Shown here piece after piece: positions 4,326 to 34,106 of a stretch of 64,000 bases of DNA (positions within the stretch are counted from its first letter, which is position 1; every line of letters starts with the position of its first letter). Under the pieces are notes generated by a model that worked only from the letters and a program-made list of their open reading frames with translations, was not told where the DNA came from and did not search any database. The position numbers were made by a program, and so were the translations under genes. Location of the stretch: positions 1 to 64,000 of IMG/VR virus record IMGVR_UViG_3300030294_000005; one strand, written 5' to 3'.

Positions 4326-4694
4326 ATGAGAATTAAAATTGACATGACAATTAAAGAGAGGGAGCATTTATTTAAATTATGTAGTTTGTTAAAAATTAAG
4401 ATGGCTCCTACTAAAGGAAAGTGGGGATGTATAACTCCAAGTTATGCATTTGTTGAAGAAAAATGTTTTATTGATTTTATAAAAATCCTAACAGCAATGG
4501 CACCTAAGATTATTAGTTTGTTTGACTTTGTATCAGCATTGCTTCCAATAATCAAAGATGCTTTTACTAAATTTGGTAATACATGGTATACTGATACTAC
4601 AAGTGTATCAGCAGTTGAATTTGATCAATATCAAACTGAATCAAATCCTGAAGATAAAAAACAAAGTAAGGATAAAGATAAAAAGAAATCTTAA
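4326..4694 (+). CDS. Hypothetical protein, tandem paralogue 2
   Basis: GGAGG RBS before ATG 4326; similar to the previous ORF. Confidence 0.6.
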   Translation: MRIKIDMTIKEREHLFKLCSLLKIKMAPTKGKWGCITPSYAFVEEKCFIDFIKILTAMAPKIISLFDFVSALLPIIKDAFTKFGNTWYTDTTSVSAVEFDQYQTESNPEDKKQSKDKDKKKS

Positions 4695-4751
4695 TAAAAA
4701 AGAGATAAACTAGTCATTGCTAGTTTATTTTTTATTTTTTATATATCTTCC

Positions 4752-4763
4752 AACATTATAATA
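4752..4763 (+). promoter_or_regulatory. Late promoter AACA-N6-TA (helicase)
   Basis: AACA-TTATAA-TA. Confidence 0.55.
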
Positions 4764-20970: not shown

Positions 20971-22674
20971 ATGATAATATCAAACGTAGTAGCAAAAACA
21001 AAACTAAGACAAGTCCAATCTGAAACTTTAAGATTGATAAAAGAATATTTAATTACATCTTTTGGGCCAATGGCTTCTAATTCTATAATTGTTAAAGCTA
21101 CAGGTAATGCAGATGTAGTAACCCACTATTCTAAAGATGGACATACTATACTAAAAAGTATATTATTTAATGGTATAGTTGAACGAGCTGTTAGAGGAGA
21201 TTTAGAAGATTTGACTAGATATATAGTTAAAGAAGTTGGAGATGGAACAACATCTGCTATTGTATTATCATCATTAATATTTGATGAATTAATAAAAATG
21301 GAAACATCTGATTCACCATATGAAATTGTAAGAAATTTTAAAGAATGTACTGAACAAATTAAAAAAAATATTAAAAAAGAAGCACAAGTATTCGATATTG
21401 AAGCAGCATATAAAATAGCATTAATATCTACAAATGGAAATGAAACAGTTGCTGCTAATATTAAAAATATATATAAAGAATATGGTAATGATGTATTTAT
21501 TGATGTATCAACTTCTACCACAGATAAGACATATTTAAAATCATATGATGGTATGACATTAGAAAATGGATATAGTGATACAGCATTCATAAACAATTCT
21601 AAAAAAGGTGTAGCATCATTAAGAAATCCAAGAATATATGCATTTGAAGATCCTATTGATACTCCAGAAATGATAGCATTATTTAATTCTATTATAGAGC
21701 AGAATATTGTGACTCCATATGGTTCTACAGATGTAGAAGGTGCAGGGCCAATTCCTACAGTTATATTAGCACCTATGATATCTAAAGATTTAACTTCTTA
21801 TATGGATCAATTAGTTCAATTTATGTATAGATTTAAAGATGAAAATACAAGACCACCATTTTTATTAATATCAAACATCTATCAAAAAGAGCAATTTGTT
21901 GATGTTTGTAGATTATGCGGATGTAAAATGATAAAGAAATATATAAATCCAGATCAACAAGCTATTGATGTTGAAAAAGGATTAGCTCCTACATTAGATA
22001 CTATTGTTGATTTTTATGGACAAGCTGATGTTGTTGAGTCTGATGTTGTTAAAACTAAATTTATAAATCCAATGTTAATGCATGATAAGAGTAGTGGAGA
22101 ATTATCTCAAACATTTACTACATTGGTAAGTTTTTTAGAAAGTGAATTAAAGAAATCTCATGAAGAAGGACAAGATAATAAAGTAATAGGAACTTTGAAA
22201 AGAAGAATACATTCTTTAAAAGCTAATATGGTAGAATATCTTGTTGGTGGAGTTTCTACAACAGATAGAGATAGTGTTAGAGATTTAGTTGAAGATGCAG
22301 TATTAAATTGCAGATCAGCTGCTAAAAATGGTGTTGGTAGAGGTGCAAATTTTGAAGGATTAATTGCAACACAATATCTAAAAGATCAATATTATGATGA
22401 TAAAATATATGATTTAATATTTAATTCTTATGAAGAATTAGTTCGTATTTTATATAGAACTAAATATAGTGAAAAAGATACTGAAGTTAAATTAGCAACT
22501 GGTCTTAGAAATGGAATACCAATAAATTTAAGAACAGACATGTTTGAAAAAGATGTATTATGCTCAATAGATACAGATATAGTTATACTGGAAACCATAT
22601 CTAAAATAATAACTTTAATGTTTACATCTAATCAGTTTATTTGCCCAAGTCCAGCAGATAACCAATATCTATAA
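20971..22674 (+). CDS. groEL: Phage GroEL-like chaperonin
   Basis: KDGHTIL, VGDGTTSA (ATP-binding), SYDGMTL and EDAVLNCRSAAKNGV motifs. Confidence 0.85.
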   Translation: MIISNVVAKTKLRQVQSETLRLIKEYLITSFGPMASNSIIVKATGNADVVTHYSKDGHTILKSILFNGIVERAVRGDLEDLTRYIVKEVGDGTTSAIVLSSLIFDELIKMETSDSPYEIVRNFKECTEQIKKNIKKEAQVFDIEAAYKIALISTNGNETVAANIKNIYKEYGNDVFIDVSTSTTDKTYLKSYDGMTLENGYSDTAFINNSKKGVASLRNPRIYAFEDPIDTPEMIALFNSIIEQNIVTPYGSTDVEGAGPIPTVILAPMISKDLTSYMDQLVQFMYRFKDENTRPPFLLISNIYQKEQFVDVCRLCGCKMIKKYINPDQQAIDVEKGLAPTLDTIVDFYGQADVVESDVVKTKFINPMLMHDKSSGELSQTFTTLVSFLESELKKSHEEGQDNKVIGTLKRRIHSLKANMVEYLVGGVSTTDRDSVRDLVEDAVLNCRSAAKNGVGRGANFEGLIATQYLKDQYYDDKIYDLIFNSYEELVRILYRTKYSEKDTEVKLATGLRNGIPINLRTDMFEKDVLCSIDTDIVILETISKIITLMFTSNQFICPSPADNQYL

Positions 22675-22796: not shown

Positions 22797-23624
22797 ATGG
22801 AAATTACATTAGATCAATACATTGTTAATCCAATGGGTATCAAGAACTCTGTTTATTCAAATAAAGAAATGTATAGACAGTTATATGTAGAAAAACTTGA
22901 TAAAATATTAGTTAGAGAGGTTGGTAACGTAAAGTATTCCCTATTCTATGATAAAGATGGATCTTATTATATATTAATGAAAATTCCGTCAGAAGTATTA
23001 AAAGATTTTTATTATGACACAGTTATAATGTTTTATACTAATGATGAGACAATAAGATTACAAAGAACATTAAAAAATTATTTTGTTAAATTCTATTCAA
23101 ATGATCCATCATTTGTATATACCTTTGCACATGCTATGCTAAAGAATGATTTATTTATAAGAGATTTAGTACCTAGGATGTCCAAAGAAGCAGTCCAAAA
23201 AGTAGCAGCTCAAAAAAATCCAAAGAGTGAAGTAGGATACGTTAAATCATTATATTTTGAATATCTTTTAATAACTAATTATAATCTTTTGCAAAAAATT
23301 AAATTTGAATCAGAAGGTAAACCTTATGATAAGAAATCATTTTTAGCATTAATTACTCATGCTGATATTAAAGTACAAGATAGACAAGTTAAAGGTGAAG
23401 AGCTAGGAAAACAGAAAAGACTAGAAAAAGAAAAAGCTAAAAGAGATAAAATTCATAATGATAATTTTAATAGAACTGTTAGTCATCGTATTAACGGCCC
23501 TAATACTAATAATGACTTAATGATAAAGAAAACAAGAACAACATCTATAATTGGTAGATCAACTATTGATCATAATATATCAATAAAGAAAACAAAAATA
23601 ACGTCTAAGATAAAGAATAAATAA
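22797..23624 (+). CDS. Conserved hypothetical protein between the chaperonin and the sigma-like gene
   Basis: ORF; basic C-terminal tail. Confidence 0.6.
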   Translation: MEITLDQYIVNPMGIKNSVYSNKEMYRQLYVEKLDKILVREVGNVKYSLFYDKDGSYYILMKIPSEVLKDFYYDTVIMFYTNDETIRLQRTLKNYFVKFYSNDPSFVYTFAHAMLKNDLFIRDLVPRMSKEAVQKVAAQKNPKSEVGYVKSLYFEYLLITNYNLLQKIKFESEGKPYDKKSFLALITHADIKVQDRQVKGEELGKQKRLEKEKAKRDKIHNDNFNRTVSHRINGPNTNNDLMIKKTRTTSIIGRSTIDHNISIKKTKITSKIKNK

Positions 23625-23680: not shown

Positions 23681-24607
23681 ATGAAAATTATTAAGTTTGT
23701 AGAAAGGGAATTCGTTACTGTAGATGATTGGGTTCCTGAGCCAGAGGATAAGATTTTTAGACACACTAAAGATTTTGTTATTTTACCAGTATCTAAGTAT
23801 TATAATATAGATAATGATGCATTAGATTATTTTAATATTTCTAAGAAAAGATGTTATAATGAGTATAAGATGAGAGAGCATATAACCCATTATATAAATT
23901 ATTTTCTAAAATTTTATGATACTCAACAAGAACTATTCTATATATATTCTAATTTAAAGTATTTAATAAGTTTAGATGAGTATGATAAGAAAGCATTCTT
24001 TTATGATTTAGACAAATATGTATTCTCATTGTCTATGAAAATAAAGATAAATCAAATGAATAGAGATAATTATTCTCTATCTCTTAAATATAAAAATAAG
24101 AAAGATCCATGTCTACAGTATACAAACAAACATGGATATATAATGATGGAAATGAGTTTGATGATGAATTTAATAATTCCATTGCTTACTCATTTTATAT
24201 ATACTAAAAAAATTAATGATTCTAATAAATTTTTATTAGAAGCGTTTGATTTAATTATAAGCAAATTTGGAATGGACTTATACAGTAAACTATATGAAAC
24301 ATCACTTACTAATATAAATAAGAATAAAGATAAAAATCCAATATGGAATAAACAAGATATCAGAGGTATAAATACAACCACACATGCAATTGATTCTGTA
24401 GAAAATATTATTTTACAAATAATGCCAAAATATGAATATTGCCAAAATATAATAGTATTTAATTATCAGGCAATAAAAAATAATATAGGATATAGAGTTA
24501 CTACAAGTGGTTATGAATTTACATTTATTCCATTGTCATCATCTAAGAGGGATGAGGATATGAATAGTGAATTTGATAAATTTGAATCCTATTTAACTAA
24601 GGCGGAT
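23681..24607 (+). CDS. Exon 1 of probable non-virion RNAP promoter-specificity (sigma-like, AR9 gp226/phiKZ gp68-type) subunit
   Basis: Splicing 24607^25197 gives ...YLTKAD|ESLYLQNK..., 495 aa; size and position two genes from the chaperonin match AR9 (gp226/gp228). Confidence 0.6.
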
Positions 24608-25196
24608 TTTAAGTAGTCCCATTAATGTAGTAACACATTAATGAAAACTCTTTGAATTGCTGGAATACTCTAATAGCTTAATTAACTACAACGTGATCTG
24701 TAAAGATGAGCGTGAATGTGATCGAAAGATAGAAAAAATAATTAAGATGAGGTATGATGATAGTAAATCTAACCCTTGATAACAATGAGTAACCGTAGCA
24801 GCGAAGTATATTTAATAATACATCCATATAGTAAATTTAATATCTAAAAGGAATAAAAATATGATAGCAATAAAAAATAGAGCTAGATTTACTGCTATAT
24901 CTAAAGATTATAATTTTTAATATTATTAAATATAAACGTTCAACGACTATCGAAAACTAATATACTAGTAAAGTCTAGTTAAAAATAAGGTATAGAAATA
25001 TACACGAAGTGAGTAGAGTACAGCCCAAGTGGGTAGATGCATTTTAGCCAATATAAGACATCTTTAAATGGAAGTGAAGAGTATCCTACTTATATATTAA
25101 ATATAAGGGATAATGATATAGTCTAGTCTTCTAGGGAAATCCTAGAGAAGTTCATAAGAGAACTGCATTAGAGTTGCGATCTAGTGTGAATATTCG
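24608..25196 (+). ncRNA. Group I intron, 589 nt, no endonuclease ORF
   Basis: 5' U.G P1 (GGAT/GTCC); P GAATTGCTGGAA 24654; Q TAGCAGCGAAG 24796; R GTTCAACGACTA 24938; S GATATAGTCT 25115; terminal G 25196 restores the frame. Confidence 0.9.
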
Positions 25197-25757
25197 GAAA
25201 GTCTGTATTTACAAAATAAAGTAAATTGTCAAGAAACAATGAATAAGATAACTAATCATTTTGGCCCATTTGATCAAAAAGAAATAGATTTCTATATGGG
25301 ACAATTAACACAAGATGGAAAAACAATAATAAATGATTTCCAAAAGAATTTAATATTTAATCTATTCTATAAATATTTTGGAGACTCTGTTAGTATAAAA
25401 GCTATTAATAAAGAAGACTATGTTAAATTAATGATAACAGCTAAAAGAATTTTATCATCTAATAATATGGTAATATTACCCTATATAGTCAGCGGTAGAG
25501 TTAATAGACTTCCACAAAGAAAAAATATAAATAAAAAAGAATTAAATAAAATACAGAGTTCGCCATATTTTGATTACATTACTAAGAAATATAACAATCC
25601 TAAGATAGAGAAGTATATATTCTCTGTGATAGCAACGATATTGGTATCTGATTTTCAAATAATTGATTATTATGATAAAGAACTTAATGGTAAGCATATA
25701 GAAATGATACCAGATATAGTATGTGAAGAAATTCTTATGTATATAATGAGTATATAG
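25197..25757 (+). CDS. Exon 2 of the sigma-like RNAP subunit
   Basis: In frame from GAA 25197 through ATG 25239 to stop. Confidence 0.8.
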   Translation, partial: ESLYLQNKVNCQETMNKITNHFGPFDQKEIDFYMGQLTQDGKTIINDFQKNLIFNLFYKYFGDSVSIKAINKEDYVKLMITAKRILSSNNMVILPYIVSGRVNRLPQRKNINKKELNKIQSSPYFDYITKKYNNPKIEKYIFSVIATILVSDFQIIDYYDKELNGKHIEMIPDIVCEEILMYIMSI

Positions 25758-25856: not shown

Positions 25857-26159
25857 ATGAAAAAATTAATAATAGCAATACTATTATTAATACTAGTATT
25901 TTTTGGAGGTTATGAAGGATACTTTATTTATAGTAGATATCAAGAAAATAATTGTAGTATTAAGATTGAAACAGTTTCTGCACAAATAATTAATAGACAG
26001 CAACCTGATAAAGTTACTATAGAATATAAGGATACTATAGTTATAATTAATAATAAAGAACTATATAATCAAGACATTCATCTAATGGTAAAAATGAAAT
26101 TAAAAACATATACTCAACCTAACAAAGAAGTATATAAAAAAGAACTATCTATAAATTAA
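25857..26159 (+). CDS. Small secreted or membrane-anchored protein
   Basis: MKK plus hydrophobic N-terminus. Confidence 0.6.
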   Translation: MKKLIIAILLLILVFFGGYEGYFIYSRYQENNCSIKIETVSAQIINRQQPDKVTIEYKDTIVIINNKELYNQDIHLMVKMKLKTYTQPNKEVYKKELSIN

Positions 26160-26182
26160 TTATAAGAAAGGATGATAGAAAA

Positions 26183-26380
26183 ATGCATATGCTAAGTAAT
26201 GAGGGAATTATAAAGATTGAGAAAAAATCATTTATTAAAAGATTATTTTGTAAACACCTTGATATTATTACTGGAGAAAGTTGTAGTTCAATGGGACTTA
26301 TGCGTATCTCTGGACAAGATATTATTACAGCTTGTAAAAAATGTGGAACGATTATAAATCGTCAATCTACAAATTATTAG
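26183..26380 (+). CDS. Small putative Zn-binding protein
   Basis: LFCKH...CKKCG motif. Confidence 0.55.
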   Translation: MHMLSNEGIIKIEKKSFIKRLFCKHLDIITGESCSSMGLMRISGQDIITACKKCGTIINRQSTNY

Positions 26381-26397
26381 ATAGGAGGATATATTAA

Positions 26398-26700
26398 ATG
26401 GATATAGTAATAAAATTTAATGATAAAAAAATAGGGGTTAAAGATGTAATACAAGTTAAACCTGAGGAAATAGAAGAGTTATTAACTAAAATAATAGATG
26501 AGTTGGTAACTGAATATACAAAAGGCGATTACGAAATACATGATTTATTAAATTCAATATGTATTAATGATCTATCTATATCTGATGTAACTACTATTTA
26601 TGCTAGATTATATCATATAATAGAAAGTGATACAATTTTAAGAAAATATTGTGAAGGAGGATATGTAAACGTAGCTACTAATACTATATATCCTAGATAA
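26398..26700 (+). CDS. Hypothetical protein
   Basis: AGGAGG RBS. Confidence 0.6.
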   Translation: MDIVIKFNDKKIGVKDVIQVKPEEIEELLTKIIDELVTEYTKGDYEIHDLLNSICINDLSISDVTTIYARLYHIIESDTILRKYCEGGYVNVATNTIYPR

Positions 26701-26718: not shown

Positions 26719-27762
26719 GTGGATATCTCTAGTAGATTAAAAGAAGTATTATTACAGATTCCTTCAGCTAGATTAGCAGCTGGAGGACATGAAGTTATTA
26801 TGATTTGTCCATATTGTGGCGGATCTAAAACAGATAAAAATGCAAGAAAGTTTTATGTAAGTTTACCAACAGATGATACTCCAAGCCTATTTCATTGTTA
26901 TTATGTTAACTGCCTTGTTGGGGGAGTTACGACTAAAGATAAATTATTAGAATGGGGTGTATATGATCAAGAAACTGCAATAGAATTAACTAAATATAAT
27001 AAGTATTCACTATCTTTAGATAAAAATAAAAAATTTAAAGATAGTGAAGTATATAAATTAGATAATAGATTTGTTTCAGATAATCAATTATCGCAGACTA
27101 AATTAAAATATATAAATAATAGATTGGGAATAAATCTATCTTATAATGATTTATTAGATAAGAAGATTGTATTAAACTTAAGAGATTTATTAGATTCTAA
27201 TAATATATCAGAATATACAAGAGATGTTAGAATTGTAAATGAGTTAGATCAATCTTTTATTGGATTTATATCTCAAGATAATGCGTTTGTAAATCTAAAG
27301 AATTTAAGACCTGGTAAAGTATATAAGTCAATAGATACAAGATTTGTTAATTATAATATATTTGGTAAGATAGATAACACACAAATGTATTATACTATAC
27401 CAACACAGATAGATTTAGCAAATCCTAATAGAATAAAGGTGCATGTAGCAGAAGGTGGTTATGATATATTATCAATATATTATAACATGTATCCTAATCA
27501 TGAGCATTCAATCTATTCTGCTATACTAGGTGGAGGATACCTAGGAATATGCAAACATTTTATTCATACAATGAAATTGATAAATATTGAATTTCATATT
27601 TTTATTGATAATGATGTTGATGATTATATTATATATACTATAAATGAATATTTAAAAGTATATAACATACCATTATATCTTCATAAAAATATGTATCCAA
27701 AAGAAAAAGATTTTGGAGTTAGAATTACCAATATAAAAGAGCAAATATCTTTAATAAGATGA
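26719..27762 (+). CDS. DNA primase (Zn finger plus TOPRIM)
   Basis: CPYCG...FHCY..NC zinc finger; VAEGGYD and FIDND TOPRIM acidic motifs. Confidence 0.8.
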   Translation: MDISSRLKEVLLQIPSARLAAGGHEVIMICPYCGGSKTDKNARKFYVSLPTDDTPSLFHCYYVNCLVGGVTTKDKLLEWGVYDQETAIELTKYNKYSLSLDKNKKFKDSEVYKLDNRFVSDNQLSQTKLKYINNRLGINLSYNDLLDKKIVLNLRDLLDSNNISEYTRDVRIVNELDQSFIGFISQDNAFVNLKNLRPGKVYKSIDTRFVNYNIFGKIDNTQMYYTIPTQIDLANPNRIKVHVAEGGYDILSIYYNMYPNHEHSIYSAILGGGYLGICKHFIHTMKLINIEFHIFIDNDVDDYIIYTINEYLKVYNIPLYLHKNMYPKEKDFGVRITNIKEQISLIR

Positions 27763-31133: not shown

Positions 31134-31331
31134 TTAAAAAATTGGATCTGACACTTTTGTTTCAGGTAGAATTAATGTAAGATTATATAATGATTGAATA
31201 GCTTCATTTGATGATGTTCTTATATTTAACCCACCTAAAGATATATAATGAGATTTAGCCTGCATATGCTCTTCTAATTCTTGATTAGCTTCTATTGTAT
31301 ATGCTGCTTTTACTGTAACCTGATCTCCATC
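31134..31331 (-). CDS. rpoC: Exon 2 (65 aa) of the virion RNAP beta'-N subunit (missed by the ORF track)
   Basis: DGDQVTVKAAYTIEANQEL...SDPIF*; completes the catalytic GGDY|DGD motif. Confidence 0.85.
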   Translation of the reverse strand, partial: DGDQVTVKAAYTIEANQELEEHMQAKSHYISLGGLNIRTSSNEAIQSLYNLTLILPETKVSDPIF

Positions 31332-32621
31332 TATTTAACGCCCTTATTCTGGATGCTGAGCACTTATATTTTTATATAAGATTGGACTATATTATACCTT
31401 TCGGCCCGCCTCTTTCGATTTAAAGGATTTAATACCTACCACAAAGTGGCCCTACTCTACTCACTTCAGAAGTGTATCCACCTCTTAATTTTAACTAGAA
31501 GTATTACTAGTATATCAGCTTTCGATAGTCTCTGAACCTTCTACCAATTATAATCTTTAGATATATCGAGATAAGCATCTCTTCGTCGTATTCGTCCTAT
31601 GAATCCACGACATTGTTCATAAGTTCCAGGTAAATTTAATTCACGTATTATCTCACCAGTTCTTTTACCATCTTGCAATAATTTACATACTCCAATAATA
31701 TATTCATCATAATTCATAAACTTTTTAGCAGAAGGGATATTATATAAGCATGATATTGATTGCCACCTTAAACCTTGAGCTATATGACTTACAATAAATC
31801 TATTATTTTCATTAACCTCTAATCCAGCTATTTCAAGTGTATTTCCATAATTAAATCCATCTTCTAATGCTTTGCATATAAAATGAATTTGTTTATTTGT
31901 TAATCTTGACATACCATTATCTTCACCAGCAGTAATTTCACCATGGCTCCAATTATGATTATTTATATATGGAGTGCTATAATCTATTTCTCTTGCTCCA
32001 TTTTCTATGGCATGATCTACATTTTCTTGTGGTGTAATCCATTCAAGATTTTCAATTCTATTATTGAATTTACATAGATCCTTATGATTAACAAATATTT
32101 TATTTTCTGGATCTGAATTTATTATAAACATTATTGCAACTAATACATGAATTCTATATGTAGATCTTGTATTATTATTGTTCATTAATTGTGTTGATAA
32201 ATAAGTATCTACAATAGTTGATAATAGTTTACCTGATTTCTTATTCATAATTTTACCGAAATTACTTATTTGATATAAATCATGTTTTATATTTAAACAT
32301 TCTAAATCTACCCAAATAACTTCATTTTCAAATGTTATCGGTCTATACATAATTAATCACCTCTTAATGTATAGTTACTTGATCGGTAGACTAGTATTAT
32401 AATTGATAGCTTGGCTGCTGATTATCCATTGTTTATAAGGGTTAGGAATGTTTCACCATACCTCATCTTAATTATTTTTCTTATCTTTCGATTACATTCA
32501 CGCCTATCCATTACAGATTACGTTGTAGTATAATTAAGTTTTAGAGTATTCCAGCAGTTTAAGCGGTTTTTGTTTTAGGGAATTTCGCCCAAGGTAGACT
32601 ACAATGTATAAGATTAGGTTC
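31332..32621 (-). ncRNA. Group I intron (1290 nt) in the RNAP catalytic motif, carrying an HNH gene
   Basis: P1 GACTAT/GTAGTC with U.G; P AACTGCTGGAA 32559-32549; Q AATCAGCAGCCAAG 32423-32410; R GTTCAGAGACTA 31537-31526; S AATATAGTCC 31393-31384. Confidence 0.9.
31541..32350 (-). CDS. Intron-encoded NUMOD4-HNH homing endonuclease (I-HmuI-like)
   Basis: YQISNFGKI, IHVLVA..F and VNHKD..K.NN...NLEW.T..EN..HA; lies between intron Q and R elements. Confidence 0.9.
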   Translation of the reverse strand: MYRPITFENEVIWVDLECLNIKHDLYQISNFGKIMNKKSGKLLSTIVDTYLSTQLMNNNNTRSTYRIHVLVAIMFIINSDPENKIFVNHKDLCKFNNRIENLEWITPQENVDHAIENGAREIDYSTPYINNHNWSHGEITAGEDNGMSRLTNKQIHFICKALEDGFNYGNTLEIAGLEVNENNRFIVSHIAQGLRWQSISCLYNIPSAKKFMNYDEYIIGVCKLLQDGKRTGEIIRELNLPGTYEQCRGFIGRIRRRDAYLDISKDYNW

Positions 32622-34106
32622 ATAGTCTCCACCTATAGCAGTAAGATATAGATTACATATATTCAATGTATCTATAAATTTATTACTTGTATCCTTTTCT
32701 ATATCTTCTTTTCTTATCTTAGGATAATACTTATAAAACTTATTATCATACCACATAGGTTCTATATCTTTCGTAGAAGATACAACTATTTTTGAAGGAT
32801 ATTGATTAAAATAACTATCCATAGGATATCTTGTTATTAATATTTTTTTATCACTTGAGCATTCAATACAAGCCATATATATTAAATCACACCAAGTTAG
32901 ATTTCTTCCTATTAATGGAGTTTTTAATATTTCTTCATTTGTAGCATCATCAATATCTAAATTTCTTCCTTTAAAATTCATATGAATAGTTTTCTTTTCA
33001 TCATTAGGAACTTCTATAGCAATAAATCTATTTGAATATCCATGTATAAATCTATCAAGTTCTTTCTTTATTCTAATATCAGAGAATTCTATTAATGGAT
33101 CTTTTACTTTTATATATTTTACTTCAGTACTATCCTTTTCTATATAAGGATACATTCCATTTCCAGAGAATTCATTTTCAAAGAATCTTCTTATCCAAAA
33201 TTCTACATAAGGATATAAATTTGTACATAATGATGATAGTGGAACTGCAGTATGATCTAGATCTACCATCAAGTCCTCTAATCTTTCTACTCTTAAATTT
33301 GGAGCAGATAAAACTAATCTTGAAGAATAATCGGCAGTCTTAGACATTACTGATCTTTTTATTATACCTTTTTTTCCATATATATTTGGTTCTTGTGATA
33401 ACCAAGCATATATTGCTAATAATATTTCTTGAACTCTTCCTTTAGAAGCAGTTGACATTGTTAAACCATAATCAGCAGTTTCTTTTAAAGATCTAACCGC
33501 TATTATTAGATTATCATATAACTTATTAATTTCTCCTACTCCTATTACAGTTGCTTCAGTATTTACATCTCTATAATATGCTGGTATTACTATACATTTC
33601 TTTACAAATAATTTATCTTTATTATTTTTTATGAATTGTATTTTAGTGTCTCTTTTATCTGAATCAGTAGTTCCTATTTTAATGATATCAATATTATCTT
33701 TTAAGAACTTAATACCATTTTTTCCATTCTCTTCATCTTCTACAAAATCACCTTTTGAATTTATAGAATACTTTTTTGTACCATGAACAATCTCTCTAAC
33801 TCTTTTATCCATTTGACACCATAATTTATATACTAATGGATGTAGAAAGTATTCGGTGAGGTCTATATATGCATATTTATTAGCTCTCTCATCTGTTGAT
33901 ATACCGAATATAGTATTAGATAGGAGTCCCCTTTCTGTTGGTACACCCTTTCTTACAAAATACACAGGATCAGTCACTTCTTCTATATCATTTGCTTTAA
34001 CAAATATATCTGGTTCCAATATTTCTAATTTAAAATGTTCTTCTATTGCACTTTCTAATGCAGTTTGTAATATATTAAACTTAAAATCATCTTTCAATTT
34101 TCTCAT
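32622..34106 (-). CDS. rpoC: Exon 1 of virion RNA polymerase beta' N-terminal subunit (phiKZ gp180-type); 560 aa when spliced
   Basis: GLLSNTIFG, AYIDL, VIPAYYRD, MSKTADYSSRLVLSAP and LITRYP beta' motifs, with DYDGD near the C-terminus as in phiKZ-like vRNAP. Confidence 0.85.

What the first reader, a model, noticed from the sequence alone, without database searches (positions are those of the whole stretch)
23681..25757. Group I intron interrupting the probable sigma-like promoter-specificity subunit
Seen: a 589-nt ORF-less intron (24608-25196) with full P/Q/R/S elements, U.G 5' site and terminal G. It joins two track ORFs into a 495-aa protein (KAD|ESL). Known: AR9 gp226 (phiKZ gp68 equivalent) lies two genes from chaperonin gp228, as here. 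Introns in phage RNAP beta/beta' genes are described; one in the specificity subunit is unfamiliar to me. Inference: splicing could gate the early-to-late switch. A 19-codon mini-ORF at 24861 may be an endonuclease remnant.
Basis: partly seen in the sequence, partly recalled or inferred. Interest (0 to 1): 0.6.

Follow-up and report, generated by a model that had tools for sequence, protein, structure and literature searches.

The report
Group I intron in phage sigma-like gene
A 589-base self-splicing-type (group I) intron that has lost its homing-endonuclease gene splits the sigma-like promoter-recognition subunit gene of an uncultured peat jumbo phage; the kind of element is ordinary, but this host gene is new for it and turns out to be an intron hot spot in related phages.

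Summary
Window 24608-25196 (589 nt) is an exact insertion relative to an intronless homologue that is 87% identical (P0002, 494 aa). Exon 1 (23681-24607) aligns to its residues 1-308 and exon 2 (25197-25754) to 309-494, with no gap or overlap (KAD|ESL).

The insert has a U.G 5' splice site in a P1 helix, a terminal G, and P/Q/R/S core elements. P3, P8, P9, P9.1 and P9.2 covary across nine related introns. A compact relative scores 100.9 bits on Rfam Intron_gpI. The window copy itself scores only 14 bits, probably because of its large peripheral insertions.

The split gene is a homologue of AR9 gp226, the non-virion RNA polymerase promoter-specificity subunit: profile against PDB 7S01_A E=2.7e-21, hhalign 98.2%, and fold matches to gp226 and phiKZ gp68. 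It shows the same gene order as AR9 and phiR1-37 (groEL, one gene, gp226, primase).

The mini-ORF is the 3' remnant of an HNH homing-endonuclease gene that is still intact in a paralogous intron in the same phage and in a same-site intron elsewhere.

Related phages carry introns at six or more sites in this gene, five of them in the sigma-finger-like linker.

No RNA data exist, so splicing is inferred. Nothing supports "gating of the late switch".

The parts
20971..22674 (+). GroEL-like chaperonin, the syntenic anchor two genes upstream
   Evidence: Pfam Cpn60_TCP1 (E 9e-15) and phrog_5725. The order groEL, one gene, gp226 homologue is also seen in AR9, phiR1-37 and S6.
22797..23624 (+). 275-aa conserved protein between the chaperonin and the split gene
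   Evidence: phrog_20045, E 6e-33. It corresponds to phiR1-37 g244 (annotated as a structural protein) and to the AR9 gene between groEL and gp226.
23681..24607 (+). Exon 1 (309 codons): N-terminal domain plus sigma-finger-like linker of the gp226 homologue, ending ..LTKAD
   Evidence: 87% identical to residues 1-308 of intronless P0002. Collinear with phiR1-37 g245 residues 140-318. The family profile hits AR9 gp226.
24604..24619 (+). P1: exon GGAU (24604-24607) paired with the internal guide GUCC (24616-24619). U24607.G24616 marks the 5' splice site.
   Evidence: The guide covaries with the exon in relatives: GUGAU/GUCAC, GAAU/GUUC, CGAU/GUCG, AUUCGAU/GUCGAAU.
24608..25196 (+). Group I intron, 589 nt, with no intact ORF
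   Evidence: Exact insertion relative to L002. Core elements and covariation. Folding z-score -2.95.
24614..24616 (+). In-frame TAG two codons into the intron. It would end translation of unspliced mRNA after 311 residues.
24620..24643 (+). P2 hairpin (9 bp)
   Evidence: L003 and L081 have different sequences here that still form a hairpin.
24647..24654 (+). P3, 5' strand (ACUCUUUG). It pairs with 25075-25082.
   Evidence: This long-range helix is kept through compensatory changes in seven introns.
24655..24665 (+). Element P: J3/4 plus the P4 5' strand (AAUUGCUGGAA)
   Evidence: UGCUGG is conserved in 10 of the 12 introns compared.
24667..24792 (+). P5 and its extension
   Evidence: Region 24644-24821 is 80% identical to the paralogous intron in the RNAP beta-like gene.
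24793..24801 (+). Element Q (P4 3' strand)
   Evidence: Read, and aligned with AGCAGC of the paralogous intron. The exact register is approximate.
24807..24934 (+). P6/P6a: a 14-bp stem (24807-24820 with 24921-24934) closing a 100-nt loop
   Evidence: Read and predicted in the minimum-free-energy fold. In the relatives the endonuclease ORF sits in this position.
24840..24920 (+). Remnant of the HNH homing-endonuclease gene. It includes the 19-codon mini-ORF 24861-24920 (..IKNRARFTAISKDYNF*).
   Evidence: It matches the C-terminal repeat of the L081 same-site endonuclease (tblastn E 3e-4, 25/28 nt). It also matches the C-terminus ..IRRRDAYLDISKDYNW* of the intact endonuclease in the paralogous intron. 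The DNA alignment 24896-25020 against 31565-31453 begins inside that ORF.
24939..24952 (+). Element R (GUUCAACGACUAUC). P7 5' strand is 24945-24950.
   Evidence: The first 12 nt are invariant in nine related introns.
24953..25074 (+). Peripheral region between P7 and P3'. It has candidate P7.1 (24964-24979) and P7.2 (24990-25003) hairpins and a conserved GAGUAGAGUA block.
   Evidence: The hairpins are shared with L081, but covariation is not shown.
25075..25082 (+). P3, 3' strand (UGAAGAGU)
25083..25112 (+). P8 hairpin
   Evidence: Five of six consensus pairs show compensatory changes.
25113..25123 (+). Element S (J8/7 plus P7 3' strand AUAGUC at 25118-25123)
   Evidence: The weak Rfam Intron_gpI match covers 25083-25145.
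25129..25187 (+). P9, P9.1 and P9.2 hairpins
   Evidence: Several pairs show 2-4 standard pair types across the relatives.
25196..25196 (+). Terminal G of the intron (3' splice site)
25197..25757 (+). Exon 2 (186 codons plus stop): C-terminal domain, starting ESLYLQNKVNCQET before the first ATG at 25239
   Evidence: 85% identical to P0002 residues 309-494. The 14 codons before the ATG differ from L002 at 4 nt, all synonymous. An in-frame TAG lies at 25182 and there is no start codon between it and the ATG.
26719..27762 (+). DNA primase, the downstream syntenic anchor
   Evidence: phrog_19847, E 2.5e-41. Primase also follows gp226 in AR9 and phiR1-37.

Best explanation
Window 24608-25196 is a group I intron of the phage type (IA2-like core motifs, with extra hairpins between P7 and P3'). 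It has lost almost all of its HNH homing-endonuclease gene. It interrupts the gene for the sigma-like promoter-specificity subunit (AR9 gp226 / phiKZ gp68 homologue) of the non-virion RNA polymerase of a 236-kb, 26% G+C uncultured peat jumbo phage.

The insertion lies exactly at the junction between the sigma-finger-like linker and the C-terminal domain.

Inferred mechanism:
- The pre-mRNA folds into the P1-P9.2 structure.
- An exogenous guanosine attacks after U24607.
- The freed exon-1 end attacks after G25196.
- The ligated message encodes a 495-residue protein reading ..LTKAD-ESLYLQ..
- Ribosomes on unspliced RNA stop at the TAG two codons into the intron.

The intron arrived by endonuclease-mediated homing into one of the most conserved DNA stretches of the gene. 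It persists because the gene needs precise removal of the intron. The endonuclease gene has since decayed, so this copy is probably no longer mobile by itself.

Shown: the exact insertion, the core structure with covariation, the gene identity and the endonuclease remnant. Inferred: splicing itself, homing and loss of mobility.
For: 1. Exact insertion. Intronless P0002/L002 aligns to exon 1 (residues 1-308) and exon 2 (309-494) without gap or overlap. The DNA junction reads GAT|GAA.

2. Splice-site rules. There is a U at -1 paired to G in P1, and a terminal G.

3. Core elements.
- P/Q/R/S motifs are present.
- The long-range P3 helix is kept as ACUCUUUG/UGAAGAGU, CUCUCU/AGAGAG, CUCCUU/GGGGAG, CCCUUUG/UGGAGGG, CUUUUUG/UGGAAAG and CCUCUC/GGGAGG in different introns.
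- P8, P9, P9.1 and P9.2 show compensatory changes.
- The P1 guide covaries with the exon sequence.

4. Tie to Rfam. L080, a related compact intron in the same gene, scores 100.9 bits (E 8e-25) on Rfam RF00028 across the full model.

5. Related introns.
- L081 has a 1591-nt intron at the same D|E codon junction. It carries a 382-aa HNH_3/NUMOD4 ORF, and its 3' 300 nt are 70% identical to the window intron.
- L003 (74% identical protein) carries the same intron start.

6. Paralogue and remnant. A paralogous intron with an intact HNH ORF sits in the RNAP beta-like gene of the same window. It is 80% and 70% identical over two blocks, and the second block begins in the last codons of that ORF.

7. 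Need for splicing. The 14 codons between the 3' splice site and the first ATG are conserved, with only synonymous changes, and they have no start codon. They can be translated only after splicing.

8. Gene identity.
- Profile against PDB 7S01_A: E 2.7e-21.
- hhalign against AR9 gp226: 98.2% probability.
- Foldseek of the AF2 model of P0002: 7S01_A E 3.7e-14 and phiKZ nvRNAP chain 8QUE_B E 1.1e-5.
- Synteny with AR9 and phiR1-37.

9. Real DNA. Both junctions occur in contigs from four peat samples.
Against: - The window intron does not reach Rfam's gathering score (14.2 bits against 50).
- No RNA run holds this phage, so no ligated-exon read exists.
- P1 is only 4 bp, and I could not find a convincing P10.
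- The P7.1/P7.2 assignment, and hence the subgroup, rests on two sequences.
- Exon 2 has its own in-frame ATG 14 codons in. A separately translated C-terminal domain is therefore not formally excluded.
Confidence: 0.9

Rival explanations
1. The gene is naturally split. The insert is a dead intron or mere spacer, and the phage makes the N-terminal part (311 aa, ending at the TAG) and the C-terminal domain (172 aa, from ATG 25239) as two polypeptides that assemble on the polymerase.
For: - Both pieces are called as separate ORFs.
- The split lies exactly at a domain boundary: the AF2 low-confidence linker covers residues 270-308, and AR9 gp226 has linker 265-294 followed by the CTD from 295.
- Jumbo-phage RNAP beta and beta' are themselves split into separate genes.
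Against: - The 14 codons upstream of the ATG are identical in protein to the intronless homologue. All 4 nt changes there are synonymous, and no start codon is available.
- All catalytic-core elements are intact and conserved relative to endonuclease-bearing relatives.
- There is no obvious ribosome-binding site before 25239.
- The F-K extension before the TAG is absent from homologues.
Confidence: 0.05
2. The intron splices, and its splicing rate or condition-dependence has been co-opted as a timer. Production of the sigma-like subunit, and so late transcription, waits on splicing. Alternatively, the truncated product of unspliced mRNA has a role of its own.
For: - In AR9, gp226 is needed for promoter-specific initiation by the non-virion polymerase at late promoters.
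- Splicing of T4 introns is reported to depend on translation and growth state (cited).
- The intron allele was the only one seen in four peat samples.
Against: - Presence of the intron is sporadic among relatives: about 13 of 80 loci, at six or more different sites, often with HNH genes.
- A close relative (87% identity) lacks it altogether.
- The same phage has paralogous introns in RNAP beta-like and DNA polymerase genes.
- This distribution fits selfish homing, not a conserved regulatory feature.
- In AR9, g226 is expressed continuously from early promoters.
Confidence: 0.04
3. The insert is an assembly artefact, or another kind of element (intein, group II intron, insertion sequence).
For: The window comes from a metagenome-assembled record.
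Against: - Contigs from four samples cross both junctions.
- Stops in all frames exclude an intein.
- The insert has no transposase or reverse-transcriptase ORF.
- Its core motifs are those of group I introns.
Confidence: 0.01

Closest known systems
Phage group I introns of the T4 td / nrdB / SPO1 DNA-polymerase type (subgroup IA2, HNH or GIY-YIG endonuclease looped out of a peripheral stem)
   Same: - U.G 5' splice site and terminal G.
- GUUCAACGACUA and GAUAUAGUC core motifs.
- Extra hairpins between P7 and P3'.
- An endonuclease ORF (here a remnant) in the P6 loop.
- An early in-frame stop after the 5' splice site.
- Insertion into a highly conserved coding stretch.
   Different: - The host gene is a sigma-like transcription-initiation subunit, not a DNA-metabolism gene.
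- The endonuclease gene is almost wholly deleted.
- The subgroup assignment was not tested by a dedicated model.
Introns in jumbo-phage RNA polymerase catalytic-subunit genes: AR9 late gene g189 (a virion RNAP subunit gene) with g190 inside its intron, and the PhiPA3 intron encoding endonuclease gp210
   Same: - Mobile group I introns inside genes of the phage's own multisubunit RNA polymerases.
- The same window also has such an intron in its RNAP beta-like gene.
   Different: - Here the interrupted gene is the fifth, promoter-specificity subunit. I found no report of an intron in it.
- Interference competition of the PhiPA3 kind needs an active endonuclease, which this copy lacks.
AR9 gp226 (PDB 7S01 chain A) and phiKZ gp68 (PDB 8QUE chain B): the fifth subunit of non-virion RNA polymerases
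   Same: - Full-length profile homology to gp226.
- Two-domain fold joined by a flexible linker.
- Fold matches to both proteins.
- Same gene neighbourhood.
   Different: - Only about 20-25% identity to gp226.
- Promoter specificity and any requirement for uracil-DNA are unknown.
- The gene is intron-split here, but uninterrupted in AR9, phiR1-37 and S6.

Membership tests
Group I intron (Rfam RF00028) | An intervening sequence whose exact removal restores a conserved reading frame | tested here: met
   Intronless P0002/L002 aligns to the two exons with no gap or overlap. The insertion is exactly 24608-25196.
Group I intron (Rfam RF00028) | The last exon base is U, wobble-paired to G of an internal guide sequence in P1. 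The last intron base is G. | tested here: met
   U24607.G24616 within GGAU/GUCC, and G25196. The guide covaries with the exon in eight relatives.
Group I intron (Rfam RF00028) | Conserved catalytic core P3-P4-P6 / P7-P3'-P8 with P, Q, R and S elements, supported by covariation | tested here: met
   Motifs. P3 and P8 show compensatory changes. P9, P9.1 and P9.2 do so too. P4 and P7 are invariant, so they are uninformative.
Group I intron (Rfam RF00028) | Score at or above the Rfam gathering threshold (50 bits) | tested here: not met
   The window intron scores 14.2 bits, E 0.84, over P8-P7' only. The homologous compact intron in L080 scores 100.9 bits over the full model. The window copy has about 125-nt insertions in each of P5, P6 and the P7-P3' region. 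These probably account for the low score.
Group I intron (Rfam RF00028) | Subgroup IA: P7.1/P7.2 between P7 and P3' | tested here: inconclusive
   Two hairpins are predicted at 24964-24979 and 24990-25003, and L081 shares them. The alignment shows no covariation for them.
Group I intron (Rfam RF00028) | Guanosine-dependent self-splicing, with ligated exons in RNA | not testable with these tools
   No RNA run holds this phage. Only DNA contigs could be laid.
AR9 gp226 / phiKZ gp68 sigma-like fifth subunit of non-virion RNAP | Sequence homology to gp226 over the full length | tested here: met
   Family profile against 7S01_A: E 2.7e-21, profile positions 35-497 against chain residues 15-458. hhalign: 98.2%, 430 columns. 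Single-exon phmmer searches found nothing.
AR9 gp226 / phiKZ gp68 sigma-like fifth subunit of non-virion RNAP | Fold: N-terminal and C-terminal domains joined by a flexible linker, resembling gp226 and gp68 | tested here: met
   The AF2 model is of the natural intronless homologue P0002: pLDDT 82, with residues 270-308 below 50. Foldseek gives 7S01_A E 3.7e-14, 8QUE_B E 1.1e-5, and the CTD-only chain 7UM1_A with target-normalised TM 0.72. The window's own joined protein was not folded.
AR9 gp226 / phiKZ gp68 sigma-like fifth subunit of non-virion RNAP | Genomic context: a jumbo phage with multisubunit RNAP genes, and the order groEL, one gene, gp226, primase | tested here: met
   An RNAP beta-like gene (phrog_2986) lies at 32562-34106 on the minus strand.
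AR9 gp226 / phiKZ gp68 sigma-like fifth subunit of non-virion RNAP | Binds the RNAP core and confers promoter-specific initiation | not testable with these tools
   This is a biochemical property. It is known for AR9 from PMC5449584 and PMC9209446.
HNH homing endonuclease (Pfam HNH_3 with NUMOD modules) | An intact ORF with the HNH catalytic motif inside the intron | tested here: not met
   Only the last 19-26 codons remain recognisable. Intact versions are at L081:5106-6254 and at window 31541-32350 on the minus strand.

The most novel reading that the evidence does not exclude
The sigma-finger-like linker of the jumbo-phage sigma-like subunit is a contested homing target: five or more insertion sites within about 40 codons, and twin introns 34 nt apart in one phage. 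On this reading the introns and their endonucleases mediate exclusion between co-infecting jumbo phages, as reported for PhiPA3. In endonuclease-less copies such as this one, splicing kinetics (or the truncated product of unspliced mRNA) would then have come to modulate when the late, sigma-dependent transcription programme starts.
Probability: 0.07. Interest if true: 0.75.

Novelty: new member of a known kind. Interest (0 to 1): 0.42.

Why it matters
- Annotation. The intron has to be recognised to annotate the phage's promoter-specificity subunit correctly. Gene callers give two orphan ORFs with no Pfam or PHROG match, and Rfam misses the intron.
- Range of host genes. Mobile group I introns in jumbo phages were known in RNAP catalytic subunits and DNA polymerase. 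This extends them to the sigma-like initiation factor.
- Hot spot. The conserved sigma-finger-like linker turns out to be an intron hot spot in uncultured relatives.
- Natural series. Intron-less, endonuclease-bearing and endonuclease-deleted alleles at one site form a series for studying the homing cycle.
- Testable dependence. Late transcription in such phages depends on an RNA-splicing step, which can be tested.

Tried and rejected
- Rfam at gathering threshold on the whole window gave nothing. At the E-value threshold it gave only a 14-bit partial Intron_gpI match.
- Pfam and PHROGs on each exon gave no family.
- phmmer of each exon against PDB sequences gave nothing. Only the family profile found gp226.
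- tblastn of exon 2 against isolated phages gave no match. Exon 1 found only phiR1-37 g245.
- RNA evidence: no RNA run holds the sequence. DNA contigs of four peat samples showed no intronless joint, so no presence/absence polymorphism was seen there. Contigs cannot show absence.
- RNAalifold on a MAFFT alignment of the nine 3' domains recovered only P8. The other helices were counted by script on columns mapped from the window. My first P9 coordinates were one base off and were corrected. P7.1 and P7.2 showed no covariation.
- The automatic P3 assignment failed for L074 and L076, and the P and S motifs were not found in L083. P3 of L074 and L076 was read by eye only.
- I looked for a P10 pairing by eye and found nothing convincing.
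- Intein, group II intron, insertion sequence and assembly error were considered and rejected.
- Searches were done exon by exon by reference, and the natural intronless homologue P0002 stood in for the spliced product. In one search a script translated junction windows of about 50 residues only to score candidate splice boundaries. Nothing joined was saved or sent to a search or fold tool.
Full report

The window has two same-strand ORFs, 23681-24616 (311 aa) and 25239-25757 (172 aa), about 620 nt apart.

A protein search with exon 1 found 428 homologues. Most are uninterrupted proteins of 494-540 aa. The closest, P0002 (494 aa, biogas-fermenter contig L002), aligns as follows:
- residues 1-308 to window 23681-24607 (87% identity);
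- residues 309-494 to window 25197-25754 (85% identity).

There is no gap and no overlap. At DNA level L002 reads ..GCA GAT|GAA AGT TTA.. where the window reads ..GCG GAT [589 nt] GAA AGT CTG...

The 14 codons between 25197 and the first ATG at 25239 encode the same peptide as in P0002. They differ from L002 at four bases, all synonymous. An in-frame TAG lies at 25182 and no start codon follows it before 25239. These codons can only be translated if they are joined to exon 1.

Contigs from four separate peat metagenomes cross both junctions. The insertion is therefore real DNA and not an assembly error.

**2. Is it a group I intron?**

Rfam at its curated threshold finds nothing in the window. 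A permissive search gives only a 14.2-bit Intron_gpI match over 25083-25145.

The sequence nevertheless has the defining anatomy:
- The last exon base, U24607, can wobble-pair with G24616 in a short P1 (GGAU/GUCC).
- The intron ends in G25196.
- P (AAUUGCUGG, 24655), Q (about 24793-24801), R (GUUCAACGACUAUC, 24939) and S (GAUAUAGUC, 25115) are present.

In the whole 236-kb genome, R and S occur in the right order on one strand at only three places. All three lie inside split genes.

Comparative evidence comes from an IMG/VR scan with the family profile, followed by tblastn. The same gene is interrupted in 13 of 80 related loci. Every insert carries the R motif and nearly all carry the S motif.

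Across these introns:
- The P1 guide changes with the exon sequence: GUGAU/GUCAC, GAAU/GUUC, CGAU/GUCG, AUUCGAU/GUCGAAU.
- The long-range P3 helix is kept through compensatory changes. Six different helix sequences occur in the seven introns where the script could assign it.
- P8 is a hairpin of different sequence in each.
- RNAalifold finds five of six P8 pairs with double changes.
- P9, P9.1 and P9.2 show two to four standard pair types at several positions.

The compact 334-nt intron of L080 scores 100.9 bits (E 8e-25) on Rfam Intron_gpI over the full model. This ties the whole family to group I. The window copy has inserts of about 125 nt in each of P5, P6 and the P7-P3' region, which probably explains its low score.

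I call it a phage-type, IA2-like group I intron. The subgroup call rests on the core motifs and on two hairpins between P7 and P3' that show no covariation.

**3. The mini-ORF**

L081 has a 1591-nt intron at the same D|E codon junction. It contains a 382-aa ORF with HNH_3 and NUMOD4 matches, and its last 300 nt are 70% identical to the window intron.

The window's 19-codon ORF (..IKNRARFTAISKDYNF*) matches a repeated C-terminal module of that endonuclease (tblastn E 3e-4; 25 of 28 nt).

The evidence inside the same window is stronger. A second intron, on the minus strand, interrupts an RNA polymerase beta-like gene (phrog_2986). It holds an intact 269-aa HNH ORF at 31541-32350 that ends ..IRRRDAYLDISKDYNW* immediately before its R element.

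The two introns are 80% identical over 24644-24821 and 70% identical over 24896-25020. The second block begins inside the last codons of the intact ORF. About 830 nt of endonuclease gene have therefore been deleted from the window intron, leaving about 80 nt in the loop of the 14-bp P6 stem.

**4. What gene is split?**

Each exon alone has no Pfam, PHROG or PDB sequence match. The only isolate hit is phiR1-37 g245, a 500-aa protein annotated 'RNA polymerase'. It is collinear with exon 1 (residues 140-318) and exon 2 (residues 321-468).

A profile of 33 full-length homologues gives clear results:
- It hits PDB 7S01 chain A, also present in 7UM0 and 7UM1 (the AR9 non-virion RNAP holoenzyme), at E 2.7e-21 over nearly its full length.
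- hhalign against the AR9 464-aa 'non-virion RNAP subunit' gives 98.2% probability over 430 columns. That protein is gp226 of the literature.

An AlphaFold model of the natural intronless homologue P0002 has mean pLDDT 82. It shows two confident domains joined by a low-confidence stretch, residues 270-308. Foldseek returns AR9 gp226 first (E 3.7e-14) and a phiKZ non-virion RNAP chain (8QUE_B, 495 residues, E 1.1e-5), with further phiKZ entries below.

Gene order is the same as in AR9 and phiR1-37: groEL, a protein of about 275 aa, gp226 homologue, then primase. In AR9 the chaperonin is g228.

P0002 stood in for it.

**5. Where in the protein does the intron sit?**

In the alignments, the junction D308|E309 of P0002 corresponds to AR9 gp226 D294|Q295. 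The structure paper (PMC9209446) defines:
- an N-terminal domain, residues 1-264;
- a linker that forms a sigma-finger-like element;
- a C-terminal domain, residues 295-464.

The intron therefore sits exactly at the linker/C-terminal-domain boundary. This is also where the low-confidence AF2 segment ends.

The linker region is among the most conserved stretches of the family; the consensus reads LSSSKRDEDNNSEFDKFESYLTKQDESLY.

Intron sites in relatives, in P0002 numbering:

| Site | Position | Loci |
|---|---|---|
| A | 148/149 | L045, L046 |
| B | about 272-279 | L072, L075, L082, L080 |
| C' | 294/295 | L076 |
| C | 298/299 | L073, L074, L078, L079, L083 |
| D | 308/309 | window, L003, L081 |
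| D' | inside codon 310 | L073 |

L073 carries two introns separated by a 34-nt exon. Five of the six sites fall in or at the edge of the linker. The site B boundaries are approximate.

**6. How it most likely works**

Shown:
- the structure;
- the exact insertion;
- the need for exon joining;
- the decayed endonuclease gene.

Inferred from established group I chemistry:
- Guanosine attacks after U24607.
- Exon ligation follows after G25196.
- This yields mRNA for a 495-aa sigma-like subunit.

Ribosomes on unspliced RNA stop at the TAG at 24614-24616. This is common in phage introns.

The sporadic, multi-site distribution fits repeated homing into conserved DNA. So do the frequent HNH ORFs and the paralogous introns in the RNAP beta-like and DNA polymerase genes of the same phage.

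The idea that splicing gates the late switch is possible in principle, because AR9 gp226 is required for late-promoter initiation. Nothing here supports it, however:
- A relative with 87% identity lacks the intron.
- AR9 g226 is transcribed from early promoters and expressed continuously.

**7. Comparison and novelty**

Mobile group I introns in jumbo-phage RNAP catalytic-subunit genes are known. Examples are the AR9 g189 intron (a virion RNAP subunit gene) with g190 inside it and the PhiPA3 intron endonuclease.

I found no report of an intron in the fifth, promoter-specificity subunit. The gene is uninterrupted in AR9, phiR1-37 and Staphylococcus phage S6. The library does not hold all journals, so this is absence of evidence.

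Verdict: this is an ordinary kind of element in a new host gene, and the hot spot in the linker is an unexpected extra. No RNA data exist for this peat phage, so splicing remains inferred.

Noticed in passing
window about 31330-32630, minus strand: A second group I intron, paralogous to the one studied. It interrupts an RNA polymerase beta-like gene. Exon 1 lies within 32562-34106 (phrog_2986) and exon 2 ends near 31135. It carries an intact 269-aa HNH endonuclease ORF (31541-32350), with P at 32559, R at 31535 and S at 31393. Rfam Intron_gpI gives 22 bits, below threshold. I did not determine the exact splice sites.
   Followed up: partly
G000:C1 about 230500-231700 (L086:~570-1770), outside the window: A third group I intron candidate in the same phage, inside a DNA polymerase gene (phrog_2927 on both flanking ORFs). 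It has a 264-aa HNH ORF (phrog_59, E 1e-29). Rfam Intron_gpI gives 33 bits, below threshold.
   Followed up: partly
L045:4427-5088 (identical in L046): The intron at site A of the gp226-like gene in another jumbo phage contains a tRNA-Leu gene (4672-4756; Rfam tRNA 58 bits, ARAGORN). It lies between Q and R, where an endonuclease ORF normally sits. A tRNA nested in a group I intron of a protein-coding gene is unusual.
   Followed up: partly
L073:4880-5826: Twin group I introns in the gp226-like gene, separated by a 34-nt exon (encoding KYESTLIRQNE plus one base). The first is at site 298/299. The second is inside codon 310.
   Followed up: partly
window 24685-24760: In all four peat samples a second contig matches this part of the intron (P5 region) with 7 differences and then diverges. 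It is not the window's own paralogue at 32394-32570. It is presumably a further copy of this intron family in another gene or another phage.
   Followed up: no
window 25857-26700: Three small ORFs (100, 65 and 100 aa) lie between the gp226 homologue and the primase. AR9 has none there and phiR1-37 has one gene. They were not examined.
   Followed up: no
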